Below are positions 252-44,862 of a DNA stretch of 64,000 bases, in pieces (position 1 is the stretch's first letter; every line of letters starts with the position of its first letter). A program made the translations under genes and the position numbers. The stretch is from positions 159,358 to 223,357 of the IMG/VR virus record IMGVR_UViG_3300037725_000018. One strand, written 5' to 3'. The notes below the pieces were generated by a model that ran no database searches, was not told the DNA's origin, and saw only the letters and a program-made list of their open reading frames with translations.

Positions 252-431
252 ATGATTGTGCTTTACGAGTCTAGAAAAGAGTGGGGGGAAATCCGCGAAT
301 TTTCTGTTGGTCCCAACCCCACGATAGAGCTTCGGGGAGAAACGTGCTCGATTGAAAACTTAGGTGATAACATTACAACCGTCAAATTCAAAAAAATTAA
401 AATCAAGCGGGCCTTAAAAGAAATTTCATAA
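252..431 (+). CDS. Family A small protein
   Basis: 59 aa from internal ATG of track ORF 108..431; starts MIVLYES, basic C-terminal helix IKRALKEIS. Confidence 0.75.
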   Translation: MIVLYESRKEWGEIREFSVGPNPTIELRGETCSIENLGDNITTVKFKKIKIKRALKEIS

Positions 432-438
432 AAAAGTA

Positions 439-466
439 GGAACCGGGCTTTATTCTCCCTGTTAAA
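439..466 (+). promoter_or_regulatory. Class B ECF-like promoter for 515..796
   Basis: GGAAC-N17-GTTAAA, then AAAGAGGGAACCCTTTT 5' hairpin. Confidence 0.65.
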
Positions 467-514
467 GCAAACGGAAAAAGAGGGAACCCTTTTCACCAAC
501 GAACCCTGTTTGCT

Positions 515-796
515 ATGAACGCCACGAAAGAAGAGATCCGCGAAAAGTTTTCTCTTCCGTCTGACAGTCGGGCAAGGAAGCTTCGGGACATGTTTTCGAA
601 GCACGTCACGTATCTGGACAAGAGCCTAAACCGGGCTTGGAAGGGTCCGGTCGAAGCGGTTGTGCCGAAAGAGAAGGCTAAAGACATGCGGGAAGCAATG
701 AGCTTCATCGGTGCTCATGTGGATAAGACCGAAAGCCTTCCGGGTGGCCGCGTTCGGCTTTACAGCCGGGGCTACTACGTTCACGTTGGGGCTTAA
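515..796 (+). CDS. Hypothetical phage protein (class B cassette inserted in family A array)
   Basis: 93 aa ORF with own promoter, 5' hairpin and terminator. Confidence 0.75.
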   Translation: MNATKEEIREKFSLPSDSRARKLRDMFSKHVTYLDKSLNRAWKGPVEAVVPKEKAKDMREAMSFIGAHVDKTESLPGGRVRLYSRGYYVHVGA

Positions 797-6219: not shown

Positions 6220-6247
6220 AAAAACGAGCGCCCCCCAAGGATGTTCC
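6220..6247 (-). promoter_or_regulatory. Class B promoter inside terminator hairpin (weak -10)
   Basis: GGAAC-N17-GTTTTT; hairpin nearly identical to the one at 6586-6630. Confidence 0.45.
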
Positions 6248-6270
6248 CAAGGGAGGCGCTCGTCTTGGTT

Positions 6271-6585: not shown

Positions 6586-6613
6586 ATAAACAAGCGCCCC
6601 CCAAGGGTGTTCC
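6586..6613 (-). promoter_or_regulatory. Class B ECF-like promoter
   Basis: GGAAC-N17-GTTTAT. Confidence 0.65.
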
Positions 6614-6656
6614 CAAGGAAGACGCTCGTTTTGGTTTTTCAATTGCAACTTCCTTT

Positions 6657-7537: not shown

Positions 7538-7819
7538 TCACACACTTGCCCAATCGGGATCTTCCCCTTCACGGGTAATGTCTTCGGCAGAAAAGCTTCG
7601 GACCCGGTGAGGAAAGAAATACACCTTCATATTTTCCCCATCGATAGAAGCGACGTATCCACCACTTCCTTCGGTGGCCTTGTCAAGTTGACGCCGCACC
7701 TCGTAGGATTGGGGAGTGTCGTCAAACTCGACGGTAATGGTTCCTTCTTCCTCAAGCTGGTGCCAGAACTCTTCAGTTGCCGGGTGCGGGTCTTCAACGT
7801 GAACGTGAATGTTATCCAT
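7538..7819 (-). CDS. Acidic hypothetical protein (class B)
   Basis: 93 aa MDNIHVHVED... Confidence 0.75.
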   Translation of the reverse strand: MDNIHVHVEDPHPATEEFWHQLEEEGTITVEFDDTPQSYEVRRQLDKATEGSGGYVASIDGENMKVYFFPHRVRSFSAEDITREGEDPDWASV

Positions 7820-7870
7820 AGGGTTAAGTGTTTGGGATGTTGCGGATTGTCTGCCGAAAAATGCGTGTGC

Positions 7871-7898
7871 TTAAAAAGGTGTTGGAAGATGAAGTTCC
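7871..7898 (-). promoter_or_regulatory. Class B ECF-like promoter
   Basis: GGAAC-N17-TTTTAA preceded by four TTCAC boxes (7898-7933). Confidence 0.6.
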
Positions 7899-8166
7899 GT
7901 GAAGCTTGTGTGAAGTGTGAATACTCTGTGAAGAGGGAACACTTTGTTGGTTTGAAGGTTTAAGTTAGTGCAGGGGGAGGAATATCTTTTTTTGCGTAAG
8001 TAGATTCTGTGAAGTGGAATGAATATTGCTTCGGTAGCAAATTCCATTCCAACCCTTCCGGCAGGTGTTCATTCAATATTGATTTATGTTTCCTGTAGAG
8101 ACTCAAGTAAACTTATTTTAGCCCCCAACCCTCTTAGACGCCGTTGAACGGGCTTTGGGCTTTTAT

Positions 8167-10998: not shown

Positions 10999-11017
10999 CG
11001 AAACCCTTTGAAAAGAT

Positions 11018-11215
11018 ATGGTCGTTTGCTTTGAAAACGAAAATGAACTTGTTTCCAATACAACGATTCTTTTCGGGCGCAAGTCCGTAAACGGAATCAT
11101 TCTTGACCCTGAAGAAATTTGTATAGTCAAAAGACCGGATAATATCCATGCCCAAGTTGAAAAAAGCTTTTCGACCTGTCGCCTCACCTGTTTTGTAAAA
11201 AGTTCACGCACATAA
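11018..11215 (+). CDS. Family A small protein (VNG subfamily)
   Basis: 65 aa, MVVCFENENE...SVNG. Confidence 0.8.
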   Translation: MVVCFENENELVSNTTILFGRKSVNGIILDPEEICIVKRPDNIHAQVEKSFSTCRLTCFVKSSRT

Positions 11216-11226
11216 AAACCGGACTC

Positions 11227-11427
11227 ATGGTTGTCTATTTTGAAAAAAGAACGGAGTTTCTAAACCATTCACAATTCACAAATCGATTTCGAACAACAAT
11301 AACCGTTAACGGGCAGGTTCTTGTCAATTGCGAATATATCGTCTCGCCCAATAAAAAAGCGCCCCTTCAAATAAAAGAAAAGGACGTTCCTTTGTATCCG
11401 GGAACGCGCCTTGTTTTCGTTTTTTAA
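11227..11427 (+). CDS. Family A small protein (VNG subfamily)
   Basis: 66 aa, MVVYFEKRTE...TVNG. Confidence 0.8.
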   Translation: MVVYFEKRTEFLNHSQFTNRFRTTITVNGQVLVNCEYIVSPNKKAPLQIKEKDVPLYPGTRLVFVF

Positions 11428-11509
11428 ACGCTTGCCCAAAGCTTTGCAGAAGGCGCAAGACGGGTTTTCGGCTTTCGGTCTTTAAGGTACCCTTTACATA
11501 CAGAGAAAA

Positions 11510-11543
11510 CCCCACACAAGGCGTCCATTTGCCTCATGTGGGG
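11510..11543. terminator. Repeated bidirectional terminator-like hairpin (CCCCACACAAGGC family)
   Basis: CCCCACACAAGGC..GCCTCATGTGGGG at a convergent junction. Confidence 0.7.
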
Positions 11544-11571
11544 CCTCTTTTGTTTATGTGTTGGGGGGGGA

Positions 11572-12051
11572 TTACAAAAGCCTTCTTAGGGCTCGAAGAA
11601 GCGCCCCGCGAAAGTAGTTTCCGCTTTGCCGGGGGTCTCCGTCTCCGTAGGATCGGTACTTAACAAGCCCCCTACGCCGAAGTGCCCTCTTTGTTGCCGT
11701 TGGGTTTGCTGAAGTGACAAGCGGTTTGGTCGGGTCGTCTGCGTGAATGACGGTTGCGCGAATCACCTCCTTCATGGTTTCGGAAAGCTCTTCGGTGGAC
11801 TGAAGGCGTGCAAGCTCGACCATTGACTTGCAATCCTCCGGGTCCCACATCCGATACCAACCGTCCGCTAAGTTGCGTGCAGGGTTAATGTCAAGAAACT
11901 CCGCAAGCCGATCAAGAGCCTCCTTGACCTCCTTTTCGCTTATGTTAACACCATCGGCATTTAAAGCCATGTAAACGTCATGGGCGGTGAAGGCTTGCCC
12001 GTCCTCGTATTCGTTTTTCACCGTACTTGCAGTTTTCAAAATTACGTCCAT
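11572..12051 (-). CDS. Hypothetical protein, possible winged-helix DNA-binding domains
   Basis: 159 aa; FTAHDVY..L...EVKEALDRL and KRALRRRGLV patterns resemble wHTH. Confidence 0.65.
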   Translation of the reverse strand: MDVILKTASTVKNEYEDGQAFTAHDVYMALNADGVNISEKEVKEALDRLAEFLDINPARNLADGWYRMWDPEDCKSMVELARLQSTEELSETMKEVIRATVIHADDPTKPLVTSANPTATKRALRRRGLVKYRSYGDGDPRQSGNYFRGALLRALRRLL

Positions 12052-12103
12052 CGTCTCTTTTGTTTGTTTGTTGGAAAGGACTTCCCTCTCTGTTTCGTGT
12101 GCT

Positions 12104-12131
12104 TAAAATAGAAAAGCCCGTGGACAGTTCC
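12104..12131 (-). promoter_or_regulatory. Class B ECF-like promoter in hairpin
   Basis: GGAAC-N17-ATTTTA; upstream TTAAC..CTTCAC box. Confidence 0.65.
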
Positions 12132-12167
12132 ACGGGCCGTGTGAAGCGTTTGTTAACAAGTGATTTT

Positions 12168-12428
12168 TTAAGAAAGGTCCCACGTGATCGATTCAACCGC
12201 ATCAGCCTTATTTCGGACACTTTCCAAATCCGAATGCACTTGAATCATCTTTTTGCGCTGGAAGGCAAGACCGGCCTTCCCATCAATTTGAATGTACGCC
12301 ATTGCGACGTTTGCGGTTTTTTCCGGGTCGTAGTATTCGGGGTCCCCGTAAGAGTGTCTTCCTCGCTCTCGAAGCCGGGACTCGATCTCTTCTTGAATTT
12401 TCGAAAGCGCGTCTTCTACGATGCTCAT
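12168..12428 (-). CDS. Hypothetical phage protein
   Basis: 86 aa ORF. Confidence 0.75.
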   Translation of the reverse strand: MSIVEDALSKIQEEIESRLRERGRHSYGDPEYYDPEKTANVAMAYIQIDGKAGLAFQRKKMIQVHSDLESVRNKADAVESITWDLS

Positions 12429-12461
12429 GGGCTTTTGGTTTTGGTTTGTGAAAATTCGGCT

Positions 12462-12671
12462 TTAAGAGAAAGGATCTCGAAGATAGTCGTACCGGATATC
12501 GAAGTATGCCATTTTCTTCGTGTCAGTTACCCCGACGATGTTTCCGGTATCTTCGTCCTTTACGTGCCACTCGCTTAGGCTTTTTCGGACTTCAAAAGAC
12601 CGACCGTCTTCTCGTTTTGCGCGGTAGCGGCCCCGCTCGATCTTGCTTGTTTCAATTTCAAACGTGTCCAT
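12462..12671 (-). CDS. Hypothetical phage protein (class B)
   Basis: 69 aa ORF. Confidence 0.75.
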   Translation of the reverse strand: MDTFEIETSKIERGRYRAKREDGRSFEVRKSLSEWHVKDEDTGNIVGVTDTKKMAYFDIRYDYLRDPFS

Positions 12672-12724
12672 TTTTCAAGCCTTGTTTTATCGTTTGAAAA
12701 CGACCTCCCCTTTCTTGCGTGTAT

Positions 12725-12752
12725 ATAAACTGGTGGCCCACTGGACGGTTCC
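12725..12752 (-). promoter_or_regulatory. Class B ECF-like promoter in hairpin
   Basis: GGAAC-N17-GTTTAT; CTTCA 11 nt upstream. Confidence 0.7.
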
Positions 12753-12795
12753 AGTGGGCCACATGAAGATTCGGTAAAATAAAGCCCGTAGCCTG

Positions 12796-13002
12796 TCACA
12801 TCTTTCGGGAAGGGTTTCGGCTCTTTTCAAGGGTGTGCCGGGTAAACCCGTTTAGCCACCACTTTCGAAACGTTGAGCCTATCGCATACGGGCAATCGCT
12901 TACCCACCCGCCTTCCTTTTTCGCAGCATATCCTTCCTTGCGAATTTCTTCTTTTAGGTCCGAATGAGGGAGAGGCTCCATGTTTCCAACAAGGTCTTTC
13001 AT
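12796..13002 (-). CDS. Rmf/CrpP-fold-like small protein
   Basis: EGYAAKKEGGWVSDCPYAIGSTFRKWWLNGF matches the ribosome modulation factor pattern GYxA..G....CPY......R..WL.GW. Confidence 0.6.
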   Translation of the reverse strand: MKDLVGNMEPLPHSDLKEEIRKEGYAAKKEGGWVSDCPYAIGSTFRKWWLNGFTRHTLEKSRNPSRKM

Positions 13003-13043
13003 CGTCTTTTTGGGTTGGTTGGTAAAGGTCTTGTGGATTTGAT

Positions 13044-13277
13044 TTAGCTGAAGTTTCGGGCAAGAACCATCATGGCAGCTTTCATAAGCTGCTTTTCGGT
13101 CACGTCCGCTTTAGTATGCACAGACAGGTACTTGTACGACGAGCCGGGGCGAACCCCAAGGGTCACGTCAAAATCCATGTAGTGACCGGAGGACTCCAAG
13201 AGGTCTTTAACTTTTTCCCCCTGACCCGGAAGAATGTACCCAAGGTTTGCAGTCGTGCGGCTACCAGAAGTTTCCAT
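13044..13277 (-). CDS. Hypothetical phage protein (class B)
   Basis: 77 aa ORF. Confidence 0.7.
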   Translation of the reverse strand: METSGSRTTANLGYILPGQGEKVKDLLESSGHYMDFDVTLGVRPGSSYKYLSVHTKADVTEKQLMKAAMMVLARNFS

Positions 13278-13311
13278 TGCGTTGGGAAGCTTTTAAGTTC
13301 AACAGGCGGCT

Positions 13312-13339
13312 TTGAAAAAAACGCCGGAAGGCGGGTTTC
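13312..13339 (-). promoter_or_regulatory. Class B ECF-like promoter in hairpin
   Basis: GAAAC-N17-TTTCAA. Confidence 0.5.
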
Positions 13340-13377
13340 ACCCCCCGGCGCGTTTGGCTACTTTTGATTTTGGATTA

Positions 13378-13602
13378 TTAGAAGAACTGTTCGTCAAGCC
13401 ACTCCTCAACGATGTGGAATTCTTCGTCGGTGATCTTCTCACCGTCCTTTTCCCCATCGGAGGGGTAGTGCTCGATCCAAACGGCCCGTTCGACCTCGAC
13501 GGACGTTTCCGCAGGGGAACGCCGCGTTGCCTTCATGTGGCTAACGCTCATGTCAACTTCGATCACGCCGTCTTCGTGATGAACCGATTCGGTAACTGTC
13601 AT
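13378..13602 (-). CDS. Acidic hypothetical protein (class B)
   Basis: 74 aa ORF. Confidence 0.75.
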   Translation of the reverse strand: MTVTESVHHEDGVIEVDMSVSHMKATRRSPAETSVEVERAVWIEHYPSDGEKDGEKITDEEFHIVEEWLDEQFF

Positions 13603-13666
13603 GGCTGTAAGCTGCTTTTGTTTGAAAGATCAAACCCGAAGGGGCTTTCCCCCTTCTTGCGCTACT

Positions 13667-13694
13667 TTACACACGCGAAAAACGGATTGGTTCC
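13667..13694 (-). promoter_or_regulatory. Class B ECF-like promoter
   Basis: GGAAC-N17-GTGTAA; TTCAC..CTTCAC upstream. Confidence 0.7.
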
Positions 13695-13736
13695 CGGCCA
13701 AAGTGTGAAGCCTTTGTGAAGCCAAGCCCCGGCCCG

Positions 13737-14018
13737 TTAAAGAAGCTCACCGAGCCGGATCGGTTCCGGGGAAGAGCGGAGGGCTTCCCGCTCGCGCTTG
13801 CGGGACCGAAGCGCGGACATGCGCTTTTTGATGTTGCGCCTCTGCTCTTTGGCTTGCCGCTCTTTTTCGCGGCGAATGGCTTCTTTATACTCCGCTTTGG
13901 AGTCGTAAGAAGTCCAGTAGCGGCCCAAAGGCCCGTCCCACTCGATCCGCAGGCCATCAAAGTCGCTAAAGCGGGTGGAAGCGCGAACGGCTTTTTGGGT
14001 AGGCTCGCAAATATTCAT
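13737..14018 (-). CDS. Hypothetical protein with basic coiled coil (class B)
   Basis: 93 aa ORF. Confidence 0.7.
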   Translation of the reverse strand: MNICEPTQKAVRASTRFSDFDGLRIEWDGPLGRYWTSYDSKAEYKEAIRREKERQAKEQRRNIKKRMSALRSRKREREALRSSPEPIRLGELL

Positions 14019-14056
14019 TGTCTTTGGGGGATTGGTTCCCTCTCTTTCGCAATACC

Positions 14057-14084
14057 TTACACGCGGGGAAAGCGGGTCTGTTCC
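14057..14084 (-). promoter_or_regulatory. Class B ECF-like promoter
   Basis: GGAAC-N17-GTGTAA; CTTCA 11 nt upstream. Confidence 0.7.
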
Positions 14085-14290
14085 GGTTTAGGATGTGAAG
14101 AAGCTGTAAGCTCCTTCGGGCCTTTTGTTTTGCTTTTAAGCGTGTTTTGAACCTGCCTTTCCCCTACCCATTTCCACGGAGAGAAAAGTCCTTGTGGGCT
14201 TTCACAAAAACCTCAAAAGCCGCTGCGTAAAGGCGTGCCCCGCCGAAAATGGGCAGGGCACGCAGGCGCTACTTGCTTTTTTGGTTTCTT

Positions 14291-14503
14291 TTAAGCTTCC
14301 GGCGTGTAGGAAACAAACGCCGGGTCGCTTTCGCTTTCGAGCTTTTCGTCAATCCCGGAAAGCTCTTCCCGTTCGATCTTGTTGCGAACGTCGTAGTGAA
14401 CCACGTCCCAACCACCACGGGCGTCAAGAAAGTAAATCACCTTCTCCCCCGGCTCGATGTGGTTTTCGGCGTAGTCACGCGCTTGGGCAAGAGTCATAAC
14501 CAT
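14291..14503 (-). CDS. Acidic hypothetical protein (class B)
   Basis: 70 aa ORF. Confidence 0.75.
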   Translation of the reverse strand: MVMTLAQARDYAENHIEPGEKVIYFLDARGGWDVVHYDVRNKIEREELSGIDEKLESESDPAFVSYTPEA

Positions 14504-14558
14504 AGCAGCTTTAACTTTTTTGTTTGCTTGAAGGGGCCTTTCCCCGTCTTGCGTGTGT

Positions 14559-14586
14559 GTAAACCCACCGAAACCGGGGTTGTTTC
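14559..14586 (-). promoter_or_regulatory. Class B ECF-like promoter in hairpin
   Basis: GAAAC-N17-GTTTAC; CTTCAC..CTTCAC upstream. Confidence 0.7.
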
Positions 14587-14634
14587 GGTTTTGAATGTGA
14601 AGCGTCTGTGAAGGAAGGTTTCTTGGCAGACATA

Positions 14635-14671
14635 AAAAAGCGGGTCACGGAAAGCCCGTGACCCGCTTTTT
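14635..14671. terminator. Bidirectional intrinsic terminator
   Basis: AAAAAGCGGGTCACGG..CCGTGACCCGCTTTTT perfect stem. Confidence 0.85.
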
Positions 14672-14690
14672 GGTTCTGTGTGGCTGACTT

Positions 14691-14993
14691 TTAGCTAAGA
14701 GAATCAAGGTAGCCGGAAAGAGCGCCAACCGAAAGCCGCTTGGACTCTCCGGTTTTCATGTCGCTAACCTTCACGCGACCGTCTTCTTTAACGGAAAGCA
14801 CGTAGCGGTCAAACTCTGCAATCGACCACCCGTGACGCTCTTCCCGAACGGTCGGGCCGAAAGAGATTCCCGTGACTTTAAGCTCGTCACGGCCAATCTT
14901 CTCCCCGGTGCTAATGTCCGGGTTGGTGTATCCGGCGCTGAAAAGCTTCTGGTTGGCTTTCCGGTAGATTTCGTTTTTGGCCTTGTCAGTCAT
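14691..14993 (-). CDS. Hypothetical phage protein (class B)
   Basis: 100 aa from MTDKAK. Confidence 0.75.
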   Translation of the reverse strand: MTDKAKNEIYRKANQKLFSAGYTNPDISTGEKIGRDELKVTGISFGPTVREERHGWSIAEFDRYVLSVKEDGRVKVSDMKTGESKRLSVGALSGYLDSLS

Positions 14994-15038
14994 GGGCTTT
15001 CTCTTTTGATGAGGGGTTTCCCTTCCTAAGTGCAATAT

Positions 15039-15066
15039 GTAAATGCGCTTTTATAGGAGCAGTTCC
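15039..15066 (-). promoter_or_regulatory. Class B ECF-like promoter
   Basis: GGAAC-N17-ATTTAC; CTTCA 11 nt upstream. Confidence 0.7.
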
Positions 15067-15085
15067 AAGCTCTCTTGTGAAGACT

Positions 15086-15397
15086 TTATGAAGACAGAGA
15101 GCTTTCAAGGTCTTCAATCACCATTTCAACGCGGCTTAAAACCGGGCTTTCCTTCTCTTCGGATACAGACGTTCGGTACATTTGTCCGGTCATTTCCATA
15201 AGCCTCTCGTACGCAAATCTAGACGGGCTTCCGTATGGAAACGTTTCCACGTCTTTCATGTCTTCTGCGTGAGCCGCCAAAACCTTGTACGTGGCCTTTA
15301 AGTCCGAATAGGTGCCACGGGTTATGATCGCCTCTTTTATCTTTCGAAAATGGCTTAGAAGGCGTTGTGCAACCTCTCGCTTGCGTTTGTCTTTCAT
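15086..15397 (-). CDS. Hypothetical helical protein (class B)
   Basis: 103 aa from MKDKRK. Confidence 0.7.
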   Translation of the reverse strand: MKDKRKREVAQRLLSHFRKIKEAIITRGTYSDLKATYKVLAAHAEDMKDVETFPYGSPSRFAYERLMEMTGQMYRTSVSEEKESPVLSRVEMVIEDLESSLSS

Positions 15398-15442
15398 GTC
15401 GGCTTGGTTTTGTTTTTCTAAAAGTAGAGTGAATGCGCGTAC

Positions 15443-15470
15443 GTATACAAAAAGAAAAGGTCGGTGTTCC
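15443..15470 (-). promoter_or_regulatory. Class B ECF-like promoter
   Basis: GGAAC-N17-GTATAC. Confidence 0.6.
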
Positions 15471-15547
15471 CGCCTTTTTTGGAACACACAAGGCCACCTG
15501 TTAGTTTGGGCCTCTTGTAGAAAGCCAACAAACAAAAAGCGAAACCG

Positions 15548-15748
15548 ATGATACAAGTTGTTGTGGATACAAGTGAAGAATCCGCTTGGATGCAGACGTT
15601 TTCAAAAGAGTTTCCAACTGAAGAAGTGGACTATTTTCATTCTGGTAAGGCAATGGAAGAGCTTGGGCTAGCCCCAATAGAAACCGGATATCGAATCTAC
15701 ATTTCAAATAAGCTTGAACACAGGTTTAAAGCGACAAAAAAGACATGA
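15548..15748 (+). CDS. Family A small protein
   Basis: 66 aa, MIQVVVDTSEE. Confidence 0.7.
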   Translation: MIQVVVDTSEESAWMQTFSKEFPTEEVDYFHSGKAMEELGLAPIETGYRIYISNKLEHRFKATKKT

Positions 15749-15900
15749 CGATATTGATTGAAAAACCCAATGAGGCAAACCGTTTTTTAAACTTTAAGAT
15801 ACGGTCGGGTGAACGCATGATTGCAAAACCTAGTTCCCTCAAAAACAAAATTATTGCATTGCGCCAAATCAAAGAATCTGTAAGGGCCGAAAAGAAATGA
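15745..15900 (+). CDS. Family A small protein
   Basis: 51 aa, MTILIEKPNE; ATGA overlaps at both ends; read by hand. Confidence 0.7.
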   Translation: MTILIEKPNEANRFLNFKIRSGERMIAKPSSLKNKIIALRQIKESVRAEKK

Positions 15901-16121
15901 TCATCATTGAAAGACAAAGTCAAAAACGGTGGGAAGTTACGGTTCGCTCTGCAAAAAGGGAAGTTTTTACCAAAGAAACACATTCGGAAATGGGGGGTAG
16001 AATCGAAAAAAAGTATTCCGTCAAACATCAAGACTCCAATGTAAAAAGAGTCTTGCGCCACATGCTAAATAATTACGACCACGAATACTCTTTAGTTACC
16101 GCTAGCAGCTTCTTGAATTAG
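15897..16121 (+). CDS. Family A small protein
   Basis: 74 aa, MIIIER. Confidence 0.7.
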   Translation: MIIIERQSQKRWEVTVRSAKREVFTKETHSEMGGRIEKKYSVKHQDSNVKRVLRHMLNNYDHEYSLVTASSFLN

Positions 16122-16679
16122 TTCCTTGACAAATTCAACCCGAACGCTGTCAACGCCTGTTGGAACGCCAGCTTGAGACTTGTCAACTGCAGGAACCTCT
16201 TCGGTTCCCAAAGCTGCCGGGACGTAAGCTTGAAGAATAAAGGCGATTTGCTCGTGTGGACGCCTCATGTACCGGGAATTAAAATTAATATTGTCAACGG
16301 GAACGCCAAACATCTTGAACATAATCGGGGTTCTGTTTGCGATTTCAACAGAATCGGCTAAAAGTTTTGTGTCCATTTCCCCCGTGTTGTGGTGAAGAAG
16401 GTGAATGATCTCGTGGTTTAAAGTTTGGCTGTCCCGCCACTTTGCAAGAACGATTTCCCCCTCTTTGCGATACATACCCGCAATTGTGTTCTTTTCGTTG
16501 ATTTTGTCCAAAACTTCAACGGGAATGTCTTGCCCGATTTGGTTTTCCAAGGCCGAAAGAACCTCTTTTTCACCACGAGTGAGCCCGTGCCCGTTTTTTT
16601 TCTTATCTACGAACGTGAAGAGAAAGAAAAGGGTCAAAAACGAAATCAAAAAAGTGCGTGAAATTTTCATTGGCTTCAT
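16092..16679 (-). CDS. Membrane-anchored/secreted HExxH zinc metallopeptidase-like protein
   Basis: N-terminal hydrophobic segment (FLISFLTLFFLFTFV); TLNHEIIH motif; downstream HEQIA candidate third ligand. Confidence 0.7.
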   Translation of the reverse strand: MKPMKISRTFLISFLTLFFLFTFVDKKKNGHGLTRGEKEVLSALENQIGQDIPVEVLDKINEKNTIAGMYRKEGEIVLAKWRDSQTLNHEIIHLLHHNTGEMDTKLLADSVEIANRTPIMFKMFGVPVDNINFNSRYMRRPHEQIAFILQAYVPAALGTEEVPAVDKSQAGVPTGVDSVRVEFVKELIQEAASGN

Positions 16680-16724
16680 TTTTGCTGTTTGTGGAAAGAA
16701 ACTTTCTTTTGTCGTCTTTGTTAC

Positions 16725-16752
16725 GTGAATAGACAAACGACGAAAAGGTTTC
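16725..16752 (-). promoter_or_regulatory. Class B ECF-like promoter for the metallopeptidase
   Basis: GAAAC-N17-ATTCAC followed by AAAGAAAGTTTCTTT 5' hairpin. Confidence 0.55.
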
Positions 16753-16764
16753 TTTTTTGCTTAT

Positions 16765-16941
16765 ATGATTTTTATTATCACCGAAGACCGAAACGAGTTT
16801 TTCGAAGCTTGTGGCATGTACCAACACAGGCACGCGCCAAGTGCTCTTGCCCAAGTGCTTCCGGACCACGTTGAAATCGCTTCCCTGCCATACAGAAACA
16901 AGTTTGCAATCAAAAAACACCTTTCAAAAACCCCAAAGTAA
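16765..16941 (+). CDS. Family A small protein
   Basis: 58 aa, MIFIITEDRNE...FAIKKHLSK; read by hand. Confidence 0.7.
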   Translation: MIFIITEDRNEFFEACGMYQHRHAPSALAQVLPDHVEIASLPYRNKFAIKKHLSKTPK

Positions 16942-16943
16942 AC

Positions 16944-17228
16944 ATGTACGTAATAATTAGCGCCGAAGAAAAACGTAAGCTTTCAAAACAAAACTTCCTA
17001 TCCGGCCTAGAGTGGAGGCTGGACGTGCCTTCCTCAATTCGCGTAGTAAGAAATTTAAAGATAAACAGACAAAGAATCAAAGAAACCAAATCTGACATAG
17101 CAAGGCATTACCTCCGAAAAATGAAAACAGATAGAACTTGGATCACCGGAAGTTTAAAGGACAAAGAGGCGCTAGAGATCATTCAAGGCAAAAAGTTAAA
17201 AGACTGTCATGATCATTATTTTGTATAG
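16944..17228 (+). CDS. Family A small protein
   Basis: 94 aa, MYVIISAEE. Confidence 0.75.
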   Translation: MYVIISAEEKRKLSKQNFLSGLEWRLDVPSSIRVVRNLKINRQRIKETKSDIARHYLRKMKTDRTWITGSLKDKEALEIIQGKKLKDCHDHYFV

Positions 17229-17367
17229 AACAAATAAAGAGTGGGACGGAGTTCACGACGCTTTTAACACAGAAGCCTCTGACCCTTCCGAAGACTTGTT
17301 TATCATTCCGGATGAAAAAAGCCACTACTTTACCGCGAAACTAATTTTTGGCACAAAAAACGCTTGA
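17209..17367 (+). CDS. Family A small protein
   Basis: 52 aa, MIIILYRTNKE; read by hand. Confidence 0.65.
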   Translation: MIIILYRTNKEWDGVHDAFNTEASDPSEDLFIIPDEKSHYFTAKLIFGTKNA

Positions 17368-40746: not shown

Positions 40747-40770
40747 TTCGTTCTTAAAAAAGTAAGTGAG

Positions 40771-40843
40771 TACCCAAGGCAGGACTCGAACCTGCAACCT
40801 TCGGATTAGGAATCCGACGCTCTTCCGGTTGAGCTACATGGGT
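40771..40843 (-). tRNA. tRNA-Arg(CCU)
   Basis: ACCCATG/CTTGGGT acceptor stem (one mismatch), TAGCTCAA D-arm, TCGGA-TTCCTAA-TCCGA anticodon arm, GGTTCGAGTCC T-arm; no encoded CCA. Confidence 0.9.
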
Positions 40844-41454: not shown

Positions 41455-41613
41455 TTAGTAGTAGTTTGCAAGAAAGGATTTGTGCTTGCGGTTTTCCGCT
41501 TCGTCCTCTTCCGGGAACGATTCTTCTTCGATCTCTTCTTCAAGGTCTTCGAAGAATCCGTAACGGAAGCGGTCAGCGGCTTCAAGGCTTTCGGTAGACA
41601 GAAAATCATCCAT
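41455..41613 (-). CDS. Small very acidic protein (class B)
   Basis: 52 aa MDDFLSTE...EDLEEEIEEESFPEEDE. Confidence 0.65.
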   Translation of the reverse strand: MDDFLSTESLEAADRFRYGFFEDLEEEIEEESFPEEDEAENRKHKSFLANYY

Positions 41614-41663
41614 CGGTCTTTGGCGTTTTTTGTTCAAGGAACTTCCCTTCTTAATCCACTACG

Positions 41664-41691
41664 TTAAATGACAAAGGGCCGGGTTGGTTCC
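41664..41691 (-). promoter_or_regulatory. Class B ECF-like promoter in hairpin
   Basis: GGAAC-N17-ATTTAA; CTTAAC..CTTCA upstream. Confidence 0.7.
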
Positions 41692-41725
41692 GGCCCTTTG
41701 TTTGAAGCGTTTGTTAAGAAGCTAG

Positions 41726-42007: not shown

Positions 42008-42481
42008 CTACTTAGAAGTGAAAACGCCTTCTTCAAGCCCTTCCTTCGGGCTTAGAGCGCCCATCTGGAGCCGGGTAAACACCATACCTACAATCTCGTC
42101 GGCAATTTTCACCAAGGCTCGTTCAAACCGCGCCTGTTGCTTCGAGTTGTGTTCATCTTCGAAGTAGGAAACATAATCCTTTCGCTCGACCGCCCGGAGA
42201 TTGTAGTACATCATTTCCGCAAGGTCAGTGGCCTTTTCGGAAAGATGATCTTCGCTAAGGCGAACAAGCTCACTTGCCATGTCCGTCCGGGCGTTGCACG
42301 AACCGTTGTTGTAGTGGTCGTATGTAAGATTCGAAATCGACCGAAGAAGCTCGCCTTCCTCTGTGCTTGCAGGTCCGGTAGACGGAACCAAGGCGTCGTA
42401 ATACTTCGAGTAAAGGTCGAACAGATCCGCTTCCCGGTTCCAATAGGTCTTTTCCGGGGAAGTGTCGGCAGTAGCAGGCAT
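42008..42481 (-). CDS. Hypothetical phage protein (class B)
   Basis: 157 aa; YW...LVPSTG.A.TEEGELLR..S...YD.YNNG pattern. Confidence 0.75.
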   Translation of the reverse strand: MPATADTSPEKTYWNREADLFDLYSKYYDALVPSTGPASTEEGELLRSISNLTYDHYNNGSCNARTDMASELVRLSEDHLSEKATDLAEMMYYNLRAVERKDYVSYFEDEHNSKQQARFERALVKIADEIVGMVFTRLQMGALSPKEGLEEGVFTSK

Positions 42482-42527
42482 GACGCTTTCTTTGTTGGTA
42501 AAAGGTCTCTTTCCTTAATGCAGTAGC

Positions 42528-42555
42528 TTTAATGTCCGTTAGGCACGTTTGTTTC
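42528..42555 (-). promoter_or_regulatory. Class B ECF-like promoter
   Basis: GAAAC-N17-ATTAAA; CTTCA 11 nt upstream. Confidence 0.65.
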
Positions 42556-42859
42556 AACGATCCGTTTGAAGATTTTTTGAAACTGCTGAAATGACTTCTT
42601 CACTTTCAATTTGAGACAGAATCTCACGTCCGGTGTGGGGAATGAGGTTAAAACTCCACCCCCTATCGTATCGCATAACAATCCTTTCTTCTCGCTCGTT
42701 GGTCACGTCAAGTTTGCTAACGTGGCCTTCTGCGCCAAGATCGGTGATTGCAAAGTCTTCACTTGGCTCCGGGTACACCTTCGCAGAAAAGGCAAACGGT
42801 ACACTATCGATTGTCACGGTGCCTCGTACCCAATTTCCTTTAACGCTTGTGATGTTCAT
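42554..42859 (-). CDS. Hypothetical phage protein
   Basis: 101 aa ORF. Confidence 0.75.
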   Translation of the reverse strand: MNITSVKGNWVRGTVTIDSVPFAFSAKVYPEPSEDFAITDLGAEGHVSKLDVTNEREERIVMRYDRGWSFNLIPHTGREILSQIESEEVISAVSKNLQTDR

Positions 42860-42904: not shown

Positions 42905-43147
42905 TTAGAAGTTTTGTGGAGTCAAGACCTTCTTTTCTTCAACGCCAAACTCGTTTGCAAATTCCGTTTCAAGATTTTCCGCAAAACTAAGGTCCGAAAC
43001 GCGGTCAAGCTCGGAGTTTTCAAACGGGGGGCTAAAAAACCAAACAACGCCGTGATCAAATTCCCGACGCACAAACGATCTTGGCTCTCCGCTTTTTTGT
43101 GGGGTTAAGTGGTGACTAACGTGGTGGTCGATAAACTTGCTTTTCAT
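42905..43147 (-). CDS. Hypothetical phage protein (class B)
   Basis: 80 aa from MKSKFIDHH; start re-called downstream of promoter. Confidence 0.7.
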   Translation of the reverse strand: MKSKFIDHHVSHHLTPQKSGEPRSFVRREFDHGVVWFFSPPFENSELDRVSDLSFAENLETEFANEFGVEEKKVLTPQNF

Positions 43148-43185
43148 TTTCTCTGTTGGGTCAGTTCCTTTGATAACGCAACAAG

Positions 43186-43213
43186 TTAAATGGAAAACAG
43201 CCAAGCTAGTTTC
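43186..43213 (-). promoter_or_regulatory. Class B ECF-like promoter
   Basis: GAAAC-N17-ATTTAA; CTTAAC..CTTCAC upstream. Confidence 0.65.
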
Positions 43214-43234
43214 CAACCGGACGTGAAGCGTTTG

Positions 43235-43435
43235 TTAAGAGACGAAGTGTTCAAGAGGGAACGGAAAATTTTCAAAACGGTGAAATGGGGGGCTTATCTT
43301 TGTGACGTGTGTTCTGTCTTTTTCGCCAATTCCCCGCTCCCAAACCAAAAATGTAGTGCCTTCAACGTTCCTATACAAATCTTCAAGCTCTTTTTCGTGA
43401 TCGGAAAGTTCTTCGTAGGTTAAAAGAACGTGCAT
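43235..43435 (-). CDS. Small acidic hypothetical protein
   Basis: 66 aa ORF. Confidence 0.7.
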   Translation of the reverse strand: MHVLLTYEELSDHEKELEDLYRNVEGTTFLVWERGIGEKDRTHVTKISPPFHRFENFPFPLEHFVS

Positions 43436-43448
43436 GACTTGGAAATAT

Positions 43449-43793
43449 TTAGCTAAGAAGATTGTGCGGATACATCCATCCCCGAACGGACGTGTTTTCC
43501 TTTCCGTCCCGAACGAAGGTGACTTTCACTCGGCAATAGCCATACTCAGAGCCTTTACGACGCCACGTGCGACCCGTAACTTCGACGTTCACGGCCACTT
43601 TAAGGTTTCGCCCGTCATTGTACTGCGGGTGTTTCCTTCCGGTGTCGAGCCGAAACTCAGCTTCTTTCCAATTGGTGCAATCGGAAATCAAGCCGCCTGC
43701 ACCCGGCCCGTGCTGCTCTTCCCACGAATCGGGAAGAATGTAATCTCCTTCTTGCGGGAGGTAGTCTTTCGGGGAAGAAGTCAAGCCTTTCAT
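43449..43793 (-). CDS. Hypothetical phage protein (class B)
   Basis: 114 aa ORF. Confidence 0.75.
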   Translation of the reverse strand: MKGLTSSPKDYLPQEGDYILPDSWEEQHGPGAGGLISDCTNWKEAEFRLDTGRKHPQYNDGRNLKVAVNVEVTGRTWRRKGSEYGYCRVKVTFVRDGKENTSVRGWMYPHNLLS

Positions 43794-43843
43794 ATCGGCC
43801 TCAAAGTGTTTGGTGAAAAAGTCTTCCTTGCCAAAGCACTACA

Positions 43844-43871
43844 TCAAATAAGAAAAGCCGGGGTTGGTTCC
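43844..43871 (-). promoter_or_regulatory. Class B ECF-like promoter in hairpin
   Basis: GGAAC-N17-ATTTGA; TTCAC..CTTCAC upstream. Confidence 0.7.
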
Positions 43872-43901
43872 CGGCCTTTCTGTGAAGGTTGTGTGAACAG
43901 A

Positions 43902-44094: not shown

Positions 44095-44340
44095 CTAGCA
44101 GCGCGGATCATCGATGCAATCGATCCACTCGTAGTTTCCAAACTCGTCAATTTCGTAAACGTCAATAAACGCCCCGTGTTCCGGGTCCTCGTTAAGAATA
44201 TCCTGTTTGGACTCTTTAAAGCTACTGCGCTCTTTAGCACACGTCTTTTTAGCTGACGCAAGATCATCGTCTCTGTCTTGAGGTGGGTTTGTCCACCACC
44301 ACGCTTCGTAAACTTTCGTTCCCGGCTTTTTACTATTCAT
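44095..44340 (-). CDS. Acidic hypothetical protein
   Basis: 81 aa ORF. Confidence 0.7.
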   Translation of the reverse strand: MNSKKPGTKVYEAWWWTNPPQDRDDDLASAKKTCAKERSSFKESKQDILNEDPEHGAFIDVYEIDEFGNYEWIDCIDDPRC

Positions 44341-44475
44341 AGCTACTGCCTGTTTTTATGGAATTTAGCTTTAACGTCGCACATCTTAAAAAAAGCGGTG
44401 GGGGACTTCAATCTCGCTTTCAATAACCATAGCAGGCTTTTTGCCTTTGGTGAAGGGTTTCCTGTCTTAACTTCA

Positions 44476-44862
44476 CTACATTACACGCCGTATCCACCGG
44501 ACAGGTTTCAAAAGATTGTGTGAAACGCGGTTCCATCCGGTAAAGTGCTCTTCTTTAACGTCAACAGTCTTTTCCTTCCACTTCACGTCTCCACGTACAG
44601 AACAGATCCCGTCGTAAAGGTCTTTTGCTTCTTTTCTTCCAGACACGTTGTACTTCTTTTTGGCGTACCAGAAGTATTTTGGCGACGTAGACTGGAAAAC
44701 ATACTTTCTTTTTTGGTGAAGAAAAAGGGAGTGATATTCATAAGTGTCTGTTTCGTAAACCGCTAAGAAGTCTCCGGTTTCGCTAACGTAAAGAAAATCT
44801 TTTCTGGACCGAAGTTTCTGATCAAGCTGATTTCTTTTTCTTTTCACCACGTCTCTTTTCAT
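44476..44862 (-). CDS. Hypothetical basic protein
   Basis: 128 aa ORF. Confidence 0.6.
   Translation of the reverse strand: MKRDVVKRKRNQLDQKLRSRKDFLYVSETGDFLAVYETDTYEYHSLFLHQKRKYVFQSTSPKYFWYAKKKYNVSGRKEAKDLYDGICSVRGDVKWKEKTVDVKEEHFTGWNRVSHNLLKPVRWIRRVM
44481..44509 (-). promoter_or_regulatory. Class B ECF-like promoter (18-nt spacer)
   Basis: GAAAC-N18-GTGTAA with CAGGAAACCC leader. Confidence 0.5.

What the first reader, a model, noticed from the sequence alone, without database searches (positions are those of the whole stretch)
12104..12160. Terminator and promoter fused: the -35 box sits at the loop of the upstream gene's terminator hairpin, behind a TTCAC direct-repeat box
Seen: at 12104, 12725, 14559, 41664, 43844, 6586 and 13312 the G(G/A)AAC lies at the stem-loop boundary of a palindromic hairpin. 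CTTCA precedes it at a nearly fixed 10-12 nt, usually with a second TT(C/A)AC about 10-11 nt further upstream (same helical face), and the box persists where no hairpin exists (14093, 15075, 42566). Inference: a head-to-tail activator or UP-element site plus a dual-use terminator/promoter module. Cruciform extrusion could gate the promoter, loosely reminiscent of N4 hairpin promoters. The repeated module could also provide recombination homology for cassette exchange.
Basis: partly seen in the sequence, partly recalled or inferred. Interest (0 to 1): 0.6.

Follow-up and report, generated by a model that had tools for sequence, protein, structure and literature searches.

The report
Promoter–terminator cassettes of a jumbo phage
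The flagged site is one copy of a roughly 100-base intergenic cassette, repeated at least 32 times in a 223-kb T4-like phage, that joins a gene's promoter to the previous gene's terminator hairpin; this kind of element (PeSL) is already known from other T4-type phages.

Summary
It lies on the minus strand. The window is the last 64 kb of a 223,357-bp T4-like jumbo phage from tidal-flat metagenomes, probably with a Bacteroidota-type host.

The module reads TTnAC-N5-CTTCAC-N10-GRAAC-N18-TKTAA, followed by a purine-rich leader and an A-rich stretch before ATG. It occurs at 32 high-scoring sites. Shuffled sequence gives none at a comparable score. All 32 point toward the downstream gene, and in 29 GRAAC lies 64-94 nt before the start codon.

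Eight copies carry a strong hairpin (dG -19 to -27 kcal/mol), always in the same register. The stem starts just after CTTCAC, AAC sits in the loop, and the T-rich TKTAA follows. Strong hairpins occur only where a co-directional gene ends 22-44 nt upstream (8/17 against 0/15, p = 0.003).

This matches PeSL cassettes, the composite early-promoter/stem-loop terminators of T4-type phages. In three metagenome runs, a variant about 88% identical lacks exactly one cassette (one module plus two ORFs). The related Flavobacterium phage immuto uses the same nested design with a different promoter.

The N4-like cruciform idea is not supported. No phage sigma factor or RNA polymerase was found, so what recognises the GRAAC/TKTAA promoter and the TTCAC boxes is unknown. 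I class this as a new member of a known kind.

The parts
12049..12156 (-). Full module at the flagged site, from the distal TTAAC box to the ATG of the 159-aa ORF (11572-12051)
12152..12156 (-). Distal TTAAC box, the upstream copy of the direct repeat
12141..12146 (-). Proximal CTTCAC box, ending 10 nt before GGAAC
12115..12138 (-). Terminator-like hairpin (10-bp stem, 7 GC pairs, 4-nt loop) followed by a T-rich tail. It would terminate transcription of the 86-aa ORF 12168-12428
12127..12131 (-). GGAAC, the -35-like element. GGA is in the 5' arm and AC in the loop
12103..12107 (-). TTTAA, the -10-like TKTAA element (19-nt spacer here, 18 in most copies). It also forms the end of the terminator T-tract
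12052..12102 (-). Predicted leader: a purine-rich AGRGGGAA box, a short complementary stretch and an A-rich tract with no Shine-Dalgarno sequence
12669..12778 (-). Module with a 13-bp hairpin (12733-12762, dG -27.3). It is absent, together with its two ORFs, in a natural variant
12165..12794 (-). 630-nt cassette (the module at 12752 plus ORFs of 69 and 86 aa) missing from a variant about 88% identical in three metagenome runs
13600..13720 (-). Module (score 44.7), weak hairpin only
14016..14110 (-).
14501..14612 (-). A separate canonical terminator lies upstream at 14635-14671
14991..15092 (-).
41611..41717 (-).
42479..42581 (-).
43145..43239 (-). Module, weak hairpin
43791..43897 (-).
44338..44535 (-). 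Module (score 31.5) 169 nt before the called start codon
6825..6921 (-). Module (score 26.9)
7817..7924 (-). Module (score 18.9) at a divergent gene boundary
413..517 (+). Plus-strand module (score 22.2) in the plus-strand early block
13321..13351 (-). It has no CTTCAC box and is at best a degenerate half-module
6597..6620 (-). GRAAC-N18-TTTAT is present but the CTTCAC box is not. A near-identical copy lies at 6231-6254

Best explanation
The site is one copy of a PeSL-type regulatory cassette of a T4-like jumbo phage: an intergenic module of about 100 bp that carries the early or middle promoter and leader of the downstream small gene. In a quarter to a third of copies it also carries the intrinsic terminator of the upstream gene.

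The promoter core is GRAAC (-35-like), an 18-nt spacer and TKTAA (-10-like). An accessory direct repeat (TTnAC and CTTCAC, 11 nt apart) lies just upstream.

Where a co-directional gene ends only 22-44 nt upstream, the sequence-free positions of the promoter are used as the two arms of a GC-rich hairpin. These positions are the N10 between CTTCAC and GRAAC and the N18 spacer. GRAAC therefore ends up at the apex, and the T-rich TKTAA region supplies the U-tract.

Inferred mechanism, not shown:
- Incoming transcripts stop at that T-tract.
- New transcripts start about 6-8 nt past TKTAA.
- Each small gene is thereby an insulated transcription unit.
- The polymerase is most likely the host enzyme, with a sigma factor or activator that has not been identified.

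The repeated modules also mark the boundaries of gene cassettes that are gained or lost between strains.
For: Promoter-like properties:
- There are 32 strong sites against none in shuffles.
- All 32 are co-oriented with the next gene. GRAAC lies 64-94 nt from the start codon in 29 of them.
- The 18-nt spacing is fixed in 24/29 sites and is 19 nt in the rest.
- Two copies sit back to back at a divergent gene boundary.
- Downstream genes are small ORFans and DNA- or RNA-metabolism genes, none structural.
- Structural genes instead carry a separate CTATATAT motif that resembles the T4 late promoter.

Terminator-like properties:
- Eight hairpins have dG -19 to -27 and z scores of -4.9 to -8.6.
- Their stem sequences differ, but the register is the same: stem from about -10 to +16..+25, loop centre +2.5 to +7.5 from the G of GRAAC.
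- The consensus scan calls three of them terminator-like.
- Strong hairpins occur only where a co-directional gene ends 22-44 nt upstream: 8/17 against 0/15, Fisher p = 0.003.
- The module at 14586 lacks a strong hairpin and has a separate canonical terminator upstream.

Family context:
- The phage is T4-like, with gp23-type capsid, portal, sheath and baseplate wedge proteins.
- Published PeSLs are composite promoter/stem-loop cassettes in T4-type phages. Their stem-loops often lie between or over the -35/-10 boxes, and reporter assays showed both promoter and terminator activity (PMC2839356; PMC4122927).
- A variant in three metagenome runs lacks exactly one module plus its two ORFs.
- The related Flavobacterium phage immuto has 27 TTG-N20-TAT(A/C)TTTAG modules, 8 of them with a hairpin at dG -8 or lower (all -12.5 or below) nested over the -33 element and spacer.
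- The same module is present in the uncultured huge phage LR756508.
Against: - There are no transcript data. No RNA run holds this DNA, so start and stop points are inferred.
- The promoter matches neither the sigma-70 consensus nor the Bacteroidota consensus (TTTG / TAnnTTTG).
- No phage sigma factor or RNA polymerase was found, so the recognising machinery is unknown.
- Some hairpins have weak T-tracts, with 4-5 T in the 12-nt tail. The scan tool did not call the one at 41691 on the minus strand.
- Module copies are only about 41% identical on average, and exact shared runs are 15 nt or less. That is thin homology for recombination.
- The single observed indel has its ends at the module edges with a 13-nt filler, so it does not prove a crossover inside the modules.
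Confidence: 0.7

Rival explanations
1. ECF-type promoter reading. This refines the best explanation rather than replacing it. The cassettes would be recognised by an ECF-type (group IV) sigma factor, either a host stress sigma hijacked by the phage or an unrecognisable phage factor. The TTCAC repeats would act as an activator site or UP-like site.
For: - GRAAC contains the GAAC core of ECF -35 elements; the E. coli sigma-E motif is GGAACTT (PMC3326320).
- GRAAC-N18-T.TAA has the same geometry as GGAACTT-N16-TCAAA. The -10 sequence and spacer length of that comparison come from my own memory.
- Housekeeping-type promoters are not enriched in the genome.
- Genomes of the Fibrobacteres-Chlorobi-Bacteroidetes (FCB) group carry 10-104 ECF sigma genes each.
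Against: - No sigma-70 or ECF homologue is encoded by the phage, even with an unfiltered profile search.
- The usual ECF -10 CGT or GTC motif is absent.
- A scan upstream of 30 sigma genes from FCB-group genomes found no matching promoter.
- Reliance on a host stress sigma for about 32 early promoters has no precedent that I know of.
Confidence: 0.2
2. The hairpin is a DNA-level promoter element (cruciform or single-stranded hairpin) that is recognised or gated as in N4 early promoters.
For: - The inverted repeats are long, GC-rich and exactly positioned on the -35-like element.
- Loops of 4-7 nt could extrude under negative supercoiling (inference).
Against: - Of the 32 modules, 21 have no hairpin worth the name yet keep every box and the distance to the gene.
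- Hairpin presence follows the need to terminate an upstream gene.
- A- and T-tracts flank the stems, as in intrinsic terminators.
- No RNA-polymerase family matched the largest ORFs.
- N4 hairpins have 5-7-bp stems and 3-nt loops (my own knowledge).
Confidence: 0.04
3. The module is the promoter of an unrecognised phage-encoded RNA polymerase. The conserved TKTAA..TAGTG..AGRGGGAA stretch would then be a long single-subunit-type promoter with initiation at the G run.
For: - A stretch of about 27 nt running from TKTAA into a GGGAA box is conserved.
- This loosely recalls T7-type promoters ending in GGGAGA (my own knowledge).
- Several large ORFs have no family match.
Against: - No RNA-polymerase family was found. 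The PF00940 control matched nothing in any control genome, so that particular search is uninformative.
- The conserved elements extend another 45 nt upstream (GRAAC, CTTCAC, TTnAC), with sigma-like two-block spacing.
- T4-like phages use the host polymerase (established knowledge).
Confidence: 0.06
4. The repeats are not promoters but a dispersed mobile or RNA-level element, such as a MITE/REP-like repeat, an RNA processing site or a translation signal.
For: - The module is an intergenic repeat present in many copies, with a conserved leader part and small leader hairpins.
- One cassette-level presence/absence polymorphism was seen.
Against: - Orientation and distance relative to the next start codon are strict.
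- Conservation is concentrated in short boxes at fixed spacing rather than along the whole length; mean identity is 41%.
- There are no terminal inverted repeats and no Rfam match.
Confidence: 0.05

Closest known systems
PeSL (promoter-early stem-loop) cassettes of T4-type phages RB49/phi1, T4/PST and KVP40/nt-1 (Arbiol et al. 2010, PMC2839356; Comeau et al. 2014, PMC4122927)
   Same: - About 100-bp intergenic composite of a promoter, a stem-loop terminator and a leader.
- The stem-loop often lies between or over the -35/-10 boxes.
- Clustered in hyperplastic regions in front of small ORFans.
- ORF-plus-module cassettes are present or absent between related phages.
- The host phage is T4-like.
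   Different: - The promoter is GRAAC-N18-TKTAA, not a sigma-70 consensus.
- It has an extra TTnAC/CTTCAC direct repeat in place of an AT-rich UP region.
- It has no Shine-Dalgarno sequence, but a conserved purine-rich leader box.
- The hairpin register is essentially single, against five subclasses in RB49/phi1.
- Copies are less alike (about 41% identity).
- The likely host is of Bacteroidota type.
- No experimental data exist.
Intergenic modules of Flavobacterium phage vB_FspM_immuto (MW353176), described here from its sequence
   Same: - A related T4-like capsid (48% identity).
- 27 co-oriented promoter modules in front of small ORFs.
- About a third carry a terminator-like hairpin nested over the upstream promoter element and spacer, followed by a T-run and the downstream box.
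   Different: - The promoter is of the host housekeeping type (TTG-N20-TAT(A/C)TTTAG).
- It has no TTCAC boxes.
- Its copies are much more alike.
ECF (group IV) sigma promoters, e.g. E. coli sigma-E GGAACTT (PMC3326320, PMC1540707)
   Same: A GAAC-containing -35 element, and the same distance from it to a short T/A-rich -10 element.
   Different: - There is no cognate sigma gene in the phage.
- The -10 sequence differs.
- Function in a phage early programme is unproven.
N4 early hairpin promoters
   Same: An inverted repeat sits inside a phage promoter.
   Different: - The hairpin is optional here.
- The stem and loop are much longer.
- No virion RNA polymerase was found.
- The hairpins have terminator-type A/T flanks.

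Membership tests
PeSL cassettes | Resident in a T4-type myovirus genome | tested here: met
   gp23-type major head protein, portal, tail sheath, baseplate wedge and large terminase. The capsid protein has tblastn hits to T4-like phages.
PeSL cassettes | Repeated intergenic motif of about 100 bp with a two-box promoter, oriented toward the next gene | tested here: met
   32 sites against 0 in shuffles. All are co-oriented, and the distance to the start codon is fixed in 29/32.
PeSL cassettes | Stable stem-loop within or next to the promoter, acting as terminator or attenuator for the upstream gene | tested here: met
   8 strong and 3 weak hairpins among 32 modules, in a fixed register and tied to a closely preceding co-directional gene. 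Terminator activity itself was not tested.
PeSL cassettes | Concentrated in hyperplastic regions in front of small ORFans or non-structural genes | tested here: met
   Clusters lie at genome positions 152-175 kb and 201-204 kb. Downstream genes are ORFans or nucleic-acid metabolism genes.
PeSL cassettes | Indels between related genomes bounded by the motifs | tested here: met
   One case: window 12165-12794 is absent from a variant seen in three runs, and the ends lie at the 5' edges of two successive modules. Only 5 kb was examined.
PeSL cassettes | Promoter close to the host sigma-70 early consensus | tested here: not met
   The consensus is GRAAC/TKTAA. Sigma-70-like and Bacteroidota-type consensus sequences are not enriched. 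Published PeSL variants already include non-consensus and MotA-type promoters.
PeSL cassettes | Promoter and terminator activity shown in reporters; mini-circle formation | not testable with these tools
   No RNA runs hold this DNA, and the host is unknown.
N4-type hairpin promoters | Hairpin present in every promoter, with a 5-7-bp stem and 3-nt loop | tested here: not met
   Only 8 strong and 3 weak hairpins among 32 modules; stems are 10-15 bp and loops 4-7 nt.
N4-type hairpin promoters | Giant virion RNA polymerase encoded by the phage | tested here: inconclusive
   The largest ORFs (1956, 1460, 1307 and 1066 aa) have no RNA-polymerase family match. The PF00940 search found nothing, but its control also matched nothing.
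ECF-sigma promoters | -35 element with a GAAC core at ECF spacing from the -10 element | tested here: met
   GRAAC is invariant in G, A, A and C, with an 18-nt spacer. The GGAACTT motif and GAAC core are given in PMC3326320.
ECF-sigma promoters | Cognate ECF sigma gene available in the phage | tested here: not met
   PF04542, TIGR02937 and PF08281 gave only helix-turn-helix hits in a homing endonuclease. An unfiltered hmmsearch with profiles built from 30 sigma genes of FCB-group genomes gave a best E-value of 0.18 with the ECF profile; the only lower value, 0.006 with the all-sigma profile, is again the homing endonuclease.
Intrinsic terminators | GC-rich stem-loop followed directly by a T-tract | tested here: inconclusive
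   The stems are clearly GC-rich. Tails carry 4-8 T in 12 nt, and the scan tool calls three of the four strong hairpins in the window.

The most novel reading that the evidence does not exclude
A T4-like jumbo phage runs its whole early or middle programme, at least 32 and perhaps about 55 promoters, from cassettes whose core has ECF-sigma geometry (GRAAC-N18-TKTAA) rather than the host housekeeping consensus, and it encodes no recognisable sigma factor. This would mean it captures a host stress-type sigma, or uses a new phage factor, possibly docking on the TTCAC direct repeats. The nested terminator-in-promoter design would then be a conserved compaction rule of this Bacteroidota-associated T4-like lineage, independent of which promoter is used.
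Probability: 0.2. Interest if true: 0.6.

Novelty: new member of a known kind. Interest (0 to 1): 0.35.

Why it matters
- It extends PeSL-type promoter/terminator cassettes from T4-type phages of Proteobacteria to a distant, uncultured jumbo T4-like lineage that probably infects Bacteroidota-type hosts.
- The terminator-inside-the-promoter layout recurs with two unrelated promoter sequences, in this phage and in Flavobacterium phage immuto. This argues that the layout itself is selected.
- It gives a ready promoter model (weight matrix and geometry) for annotating early genes in such phages.
- It flags an unassigned promoter specificity (GRAAC/TKTAA plus TTCAC boxes) whose recognising factor is worth finding.

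Tried and rejected
- An exact-pattern scan of IMG/VR gave only single matches at a number consistent with chance, with no contig holding several.
- megablast and tblastn of two giant ORFs against GenBank phages found nothing.
- The search for related loci with the 159-aa ORF found no relatives.
- No RNA runs exist, so starts and ends could not be mapped.
- Sigma-factor searches found only helix-turn-helix repeats in a GIY-YIG homing endonuclease.
- RNA-polymerase searches found nothing. The PF00940 control was silent, so that search is uninformative.
- Rfam matched only a tRNA.
- The Bacteroidota housekeeping consensus, the sigma-70 consensus and T4's TATAAATA are not enriched.
- The weight matrix finds nothing convincing in Microcystis phage Mel-JY01 and only about 4 clear copies in LR756508.
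- A scan upstream of 30 sigma genes from FCB-group genomes for the motif gave no signal.
- One apparent recombinant loose end at 15037 turned out to be the paralogous module at genome position 158423 cross-mapping, not a junction.

Full report
**Context.** The window is the last 64 kb of a single 223,357-bp IMG/VR virus record that CheckV rates as complete.
- It is a T4-like myovirus, with a gp23-type major head protein, portal, large terminase, tail sheath and baseplate wedge.
- Its capsid protein is 66% identical to that of the uncultured huge phage LR756508, 52% to Microcystis phage Mel-JY01, 48% to Flavobacterium phage immuto and 38% to Rhodothermus phage RM378.
- Only 11 of 252 genes have a Shine-Dalgarno-like word, and leaders are A-rich and G-poor.
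- Its FtsH-like protease is closest to homologues from the Fibrobacteres-Chlorobi-Bacteroidetes (FCB) group.
- Together these point, softly, to a Bacteroidota-type host.
- The DNA is found in tidal-flat metagenomes. No RNA run holds it.

**The observation.**
- At the flagged site, read 5'->3', the elements are: TTAAC (12156-12152), CTTCAC (12146-12141), a 10-bp/4-nt hairpin (12138-12115), GGAAC (12131-12127) across the stem/loop boundary, TTTAA (12107-12103), and the ATG of a 159-aa ORF at 12051.
- The strict pattern has 6 matches in the window against 0.01 expected.
- A two-block weight matrix finds 38 positions scoring 18 or more in the genome and none in two shuffled genomes.
- After removing duplicates there are 32 sites scoring 17 or more. 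All are oriented toward the next gene, and in 29 GRAAC lies 64-94 nt before the start codon.
- The consensus is TTnAC-N5-CTTCAC-N10-GRAAC-N18-TKTAA, then ..TAGTG.., a purine-rich AGRGGGAA box and an A-rich tract before ATG.
- About 20 further intergenic regions keep GRAAC-N18-TKTA without a good CTTCAC box. The upstream boxes are therefore accessory.

**The hairpins.**
- Eight of the 32 modules have a strong hairpin, with dG -19 to -27 kcal/mol and z scores of -4.9 to -8.6. Three more have weak ones.
- Stem sequences differ between copies, but the register is the same. The stem begins right after CTTCAC (about -10) and ends at +16 to +25, just before TKTAA. The loop centre is +2.5 to +7.5 from the G of GRAAC.
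- Several stems have an A-tract before and a T-tract after a GC core, the classic look of an intrinsic terminator. The consensus scan calls 12138-12115, 12762-12733 and 43881-43851 terminator-like.
- All eight strong hairpins occur where a co-directional gene ends 22-44 nt upstream of GRAAC. That is 8 of 17 modules in that context, against 0 of 15 elsewhere (Fisher p = 0.003).
- The module at 14586 has only a weak hairpin, and a separate canonical terminator lies upstream at 14635-14671.
- The simplest reading is that the intergenic space (110-125 nt) is filled by the module. A terminator can then only be built from the promoter's unconstrained positions, the N10 and the N18 spacer. This automatically places GRAAC at the apex and reuses the T-rich TKTAA as the tail.

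**Which promoter class.**
- Genes behind the modules are small ORFans, a RecA/KaiC-like ATPase, an HD-plus-kinase protein, a MoxR-type AAA ATPase, an SprT-like protease and a zinc-ribbon protein.
- Structural genes instead carry CTATATAT 27-79 nt before their start codons, analogous to the T4 late promoter.
- The module is therefore the early or middle class.
- Neither the sigma-70 consensus nor the Bacteroidota housekeeping consensus is enriched.
- No sigma-70 or ECF homologue is detectable, even with an unfiltered profile search built from 30 sigma genes of FCB-group genomes.
- No phage RNA polymerase is detectable either.
- GRAAC shares the GAAC core of ECF -35 elements (PMC3326320). Its geometry resembles that of sigma-E promoters, a comparison I make partly from memory.
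- Who reads this promoter, and what binds the TTCAC repeats, remains open.

**Comparison with the known.**
- PeSLs (promoter-early stem-loops) of T4-type phages are about 100-bp composite early-promoter/stem-loop cassettes that flank ORFans in hyperplastic regions.
- Reporter assays showed both promoter and terminator activity in those phages.
- Sister phages differ by ORFan cassettes that are replaced by a single PeSL (PMC2839356; PMC4122927).
- The present modules meet these defining features, except that the promoter is not sigma-70-like.

**Two independent lines add weight.**
- First, Logan contigs from four tidal-flat runs were laid on window 11000-16000. In three of them a variant about 88% identical skips 12165-12794. 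That segment is exactly the module at 12752 plus its two ORFs (69 and 86 aa). The ends lie at the 5' edges of two successive modules, joined by a 13-nt filler.
- Second, Flavobacterium phage immuto has 27 co-oriented TTG-N20-TAT(A/C)TTTAG modules in its small-ORF region. Eight of them have a strong hairpin nested over the TTG and spacer, followed by a T-run. This is the same architecture built on a different promoter.
- Clear copies of the GRAAC module also exist in LR756508.

**Limits.**
- There are no transcript data.
- Some T-tracts are weak.
- Module copies are only about 41% identical, with exact runs of 15 nt or less. Homologous recombination between them is therefore plausible but not shown.
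- The one indel seen is equally compatible with cassette insertion by another route.
- The cruciform/N4 idea is not supported. The hairpin is optional, follows the need for termination and does not resemble N4 hairpins.

**Verdict.** The element is a new member of the known PeSL kind, in a distant jumbo T4-like phage with an unassigned promoter specificity.

Noticed in passing
window 24575, 38329, 39542, 40705, 61902 (minus strand); 15 further sites in the rest of the genome: CTATATA(T/A) lies 11-79 nt upstream of the start codons of structural and late-type genes, including the 1956-aa and 678-aa proteins, the portal and the adaptor. It is probably this phage's counterpart of the T4 late promoter TATAAATA.
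   Followed up: partly
L221:16700-26300 (Flavobacterium phage immuto, MW353176 66.7-76.3 kb): There are 27 co-oriented modules TTG-N20-TAT(A/C)TTTAG followed by a conserved leader in front of small ORFs. Eight carry a terminator-like hairpin over the -33 element and spacer. As far as I could see, this PeSL-like system has not been described for this phage.
   Followed up: partly
window 12052-12102 and the equivalent part of other modules: A conserved purine-rich AGRGGGAA box lies about 20-27 nt after TKTAA, often followed by a short complementary CCCTT/TTCC stretch that could form a small 5' leader hairpin. It is too far from the ATG (16-22 nt or more) to act as a Shine-Dalgarno sequence, and its function is unknown.
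   Followed up: no
window 6231-6254 and 6597-6620 (minus strand): Two near-identical imperfect repeats, TTGGGAACAYCCTTGGGGGGCGCTYGTTT, lie 366 nt apart. They belong to a module subfamily without the CTTCAC box.
   Followed up: no
window 11000-16000 in runs X4-X6: A co-occurring strain about 12% divergent shows many SNPs, a 24-nt insertion behind 15603 and small indels. This indicates high microdiversity of the phage in tidal-flat sediments.
   Followed up: partly
L085:16271-17365 (minus strand, genome coordinates 16271-17365): A 364-aa GIY-YIG homing endonuclease with four helix-turn-helix repeats sits alone on the opposite strand between helicase genes. It is the only source of the sigma region-4-like hits.
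   Followed up: yes
L092:2992-4959 (minus strand): The phage encodes a full-length FtsH-like AAA protease, 52-57% identical to homologues mainly from Bacteroidota and other FCB-group bacteria. This is a possible clue to the host.
   Followed up: partly
L092:15990-16180 (genome 155992-156178): Two modules sit back to back on opposite strands (GRAAC at genome positions 156056 minus and 156103 plus) at the divergence point of two early gene blocks.
   Followed up: no
window 18626-24496 and 27797-32179 (minus strand): Giant 1956-aa and 1460-aa proteins have YadA-head-like repeats, and one has an HNH-like segment. They are probably fibre proteins and have no close relatives in GenBank phages.
   Followed up: no
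window 40770-40843 (minus strand): A tRNA-Arg (CCT) gene. Sequences with tRNA-like conserved arms also recur in intergenic regions at about genome positions 89-100 kb.
   Followed up: no
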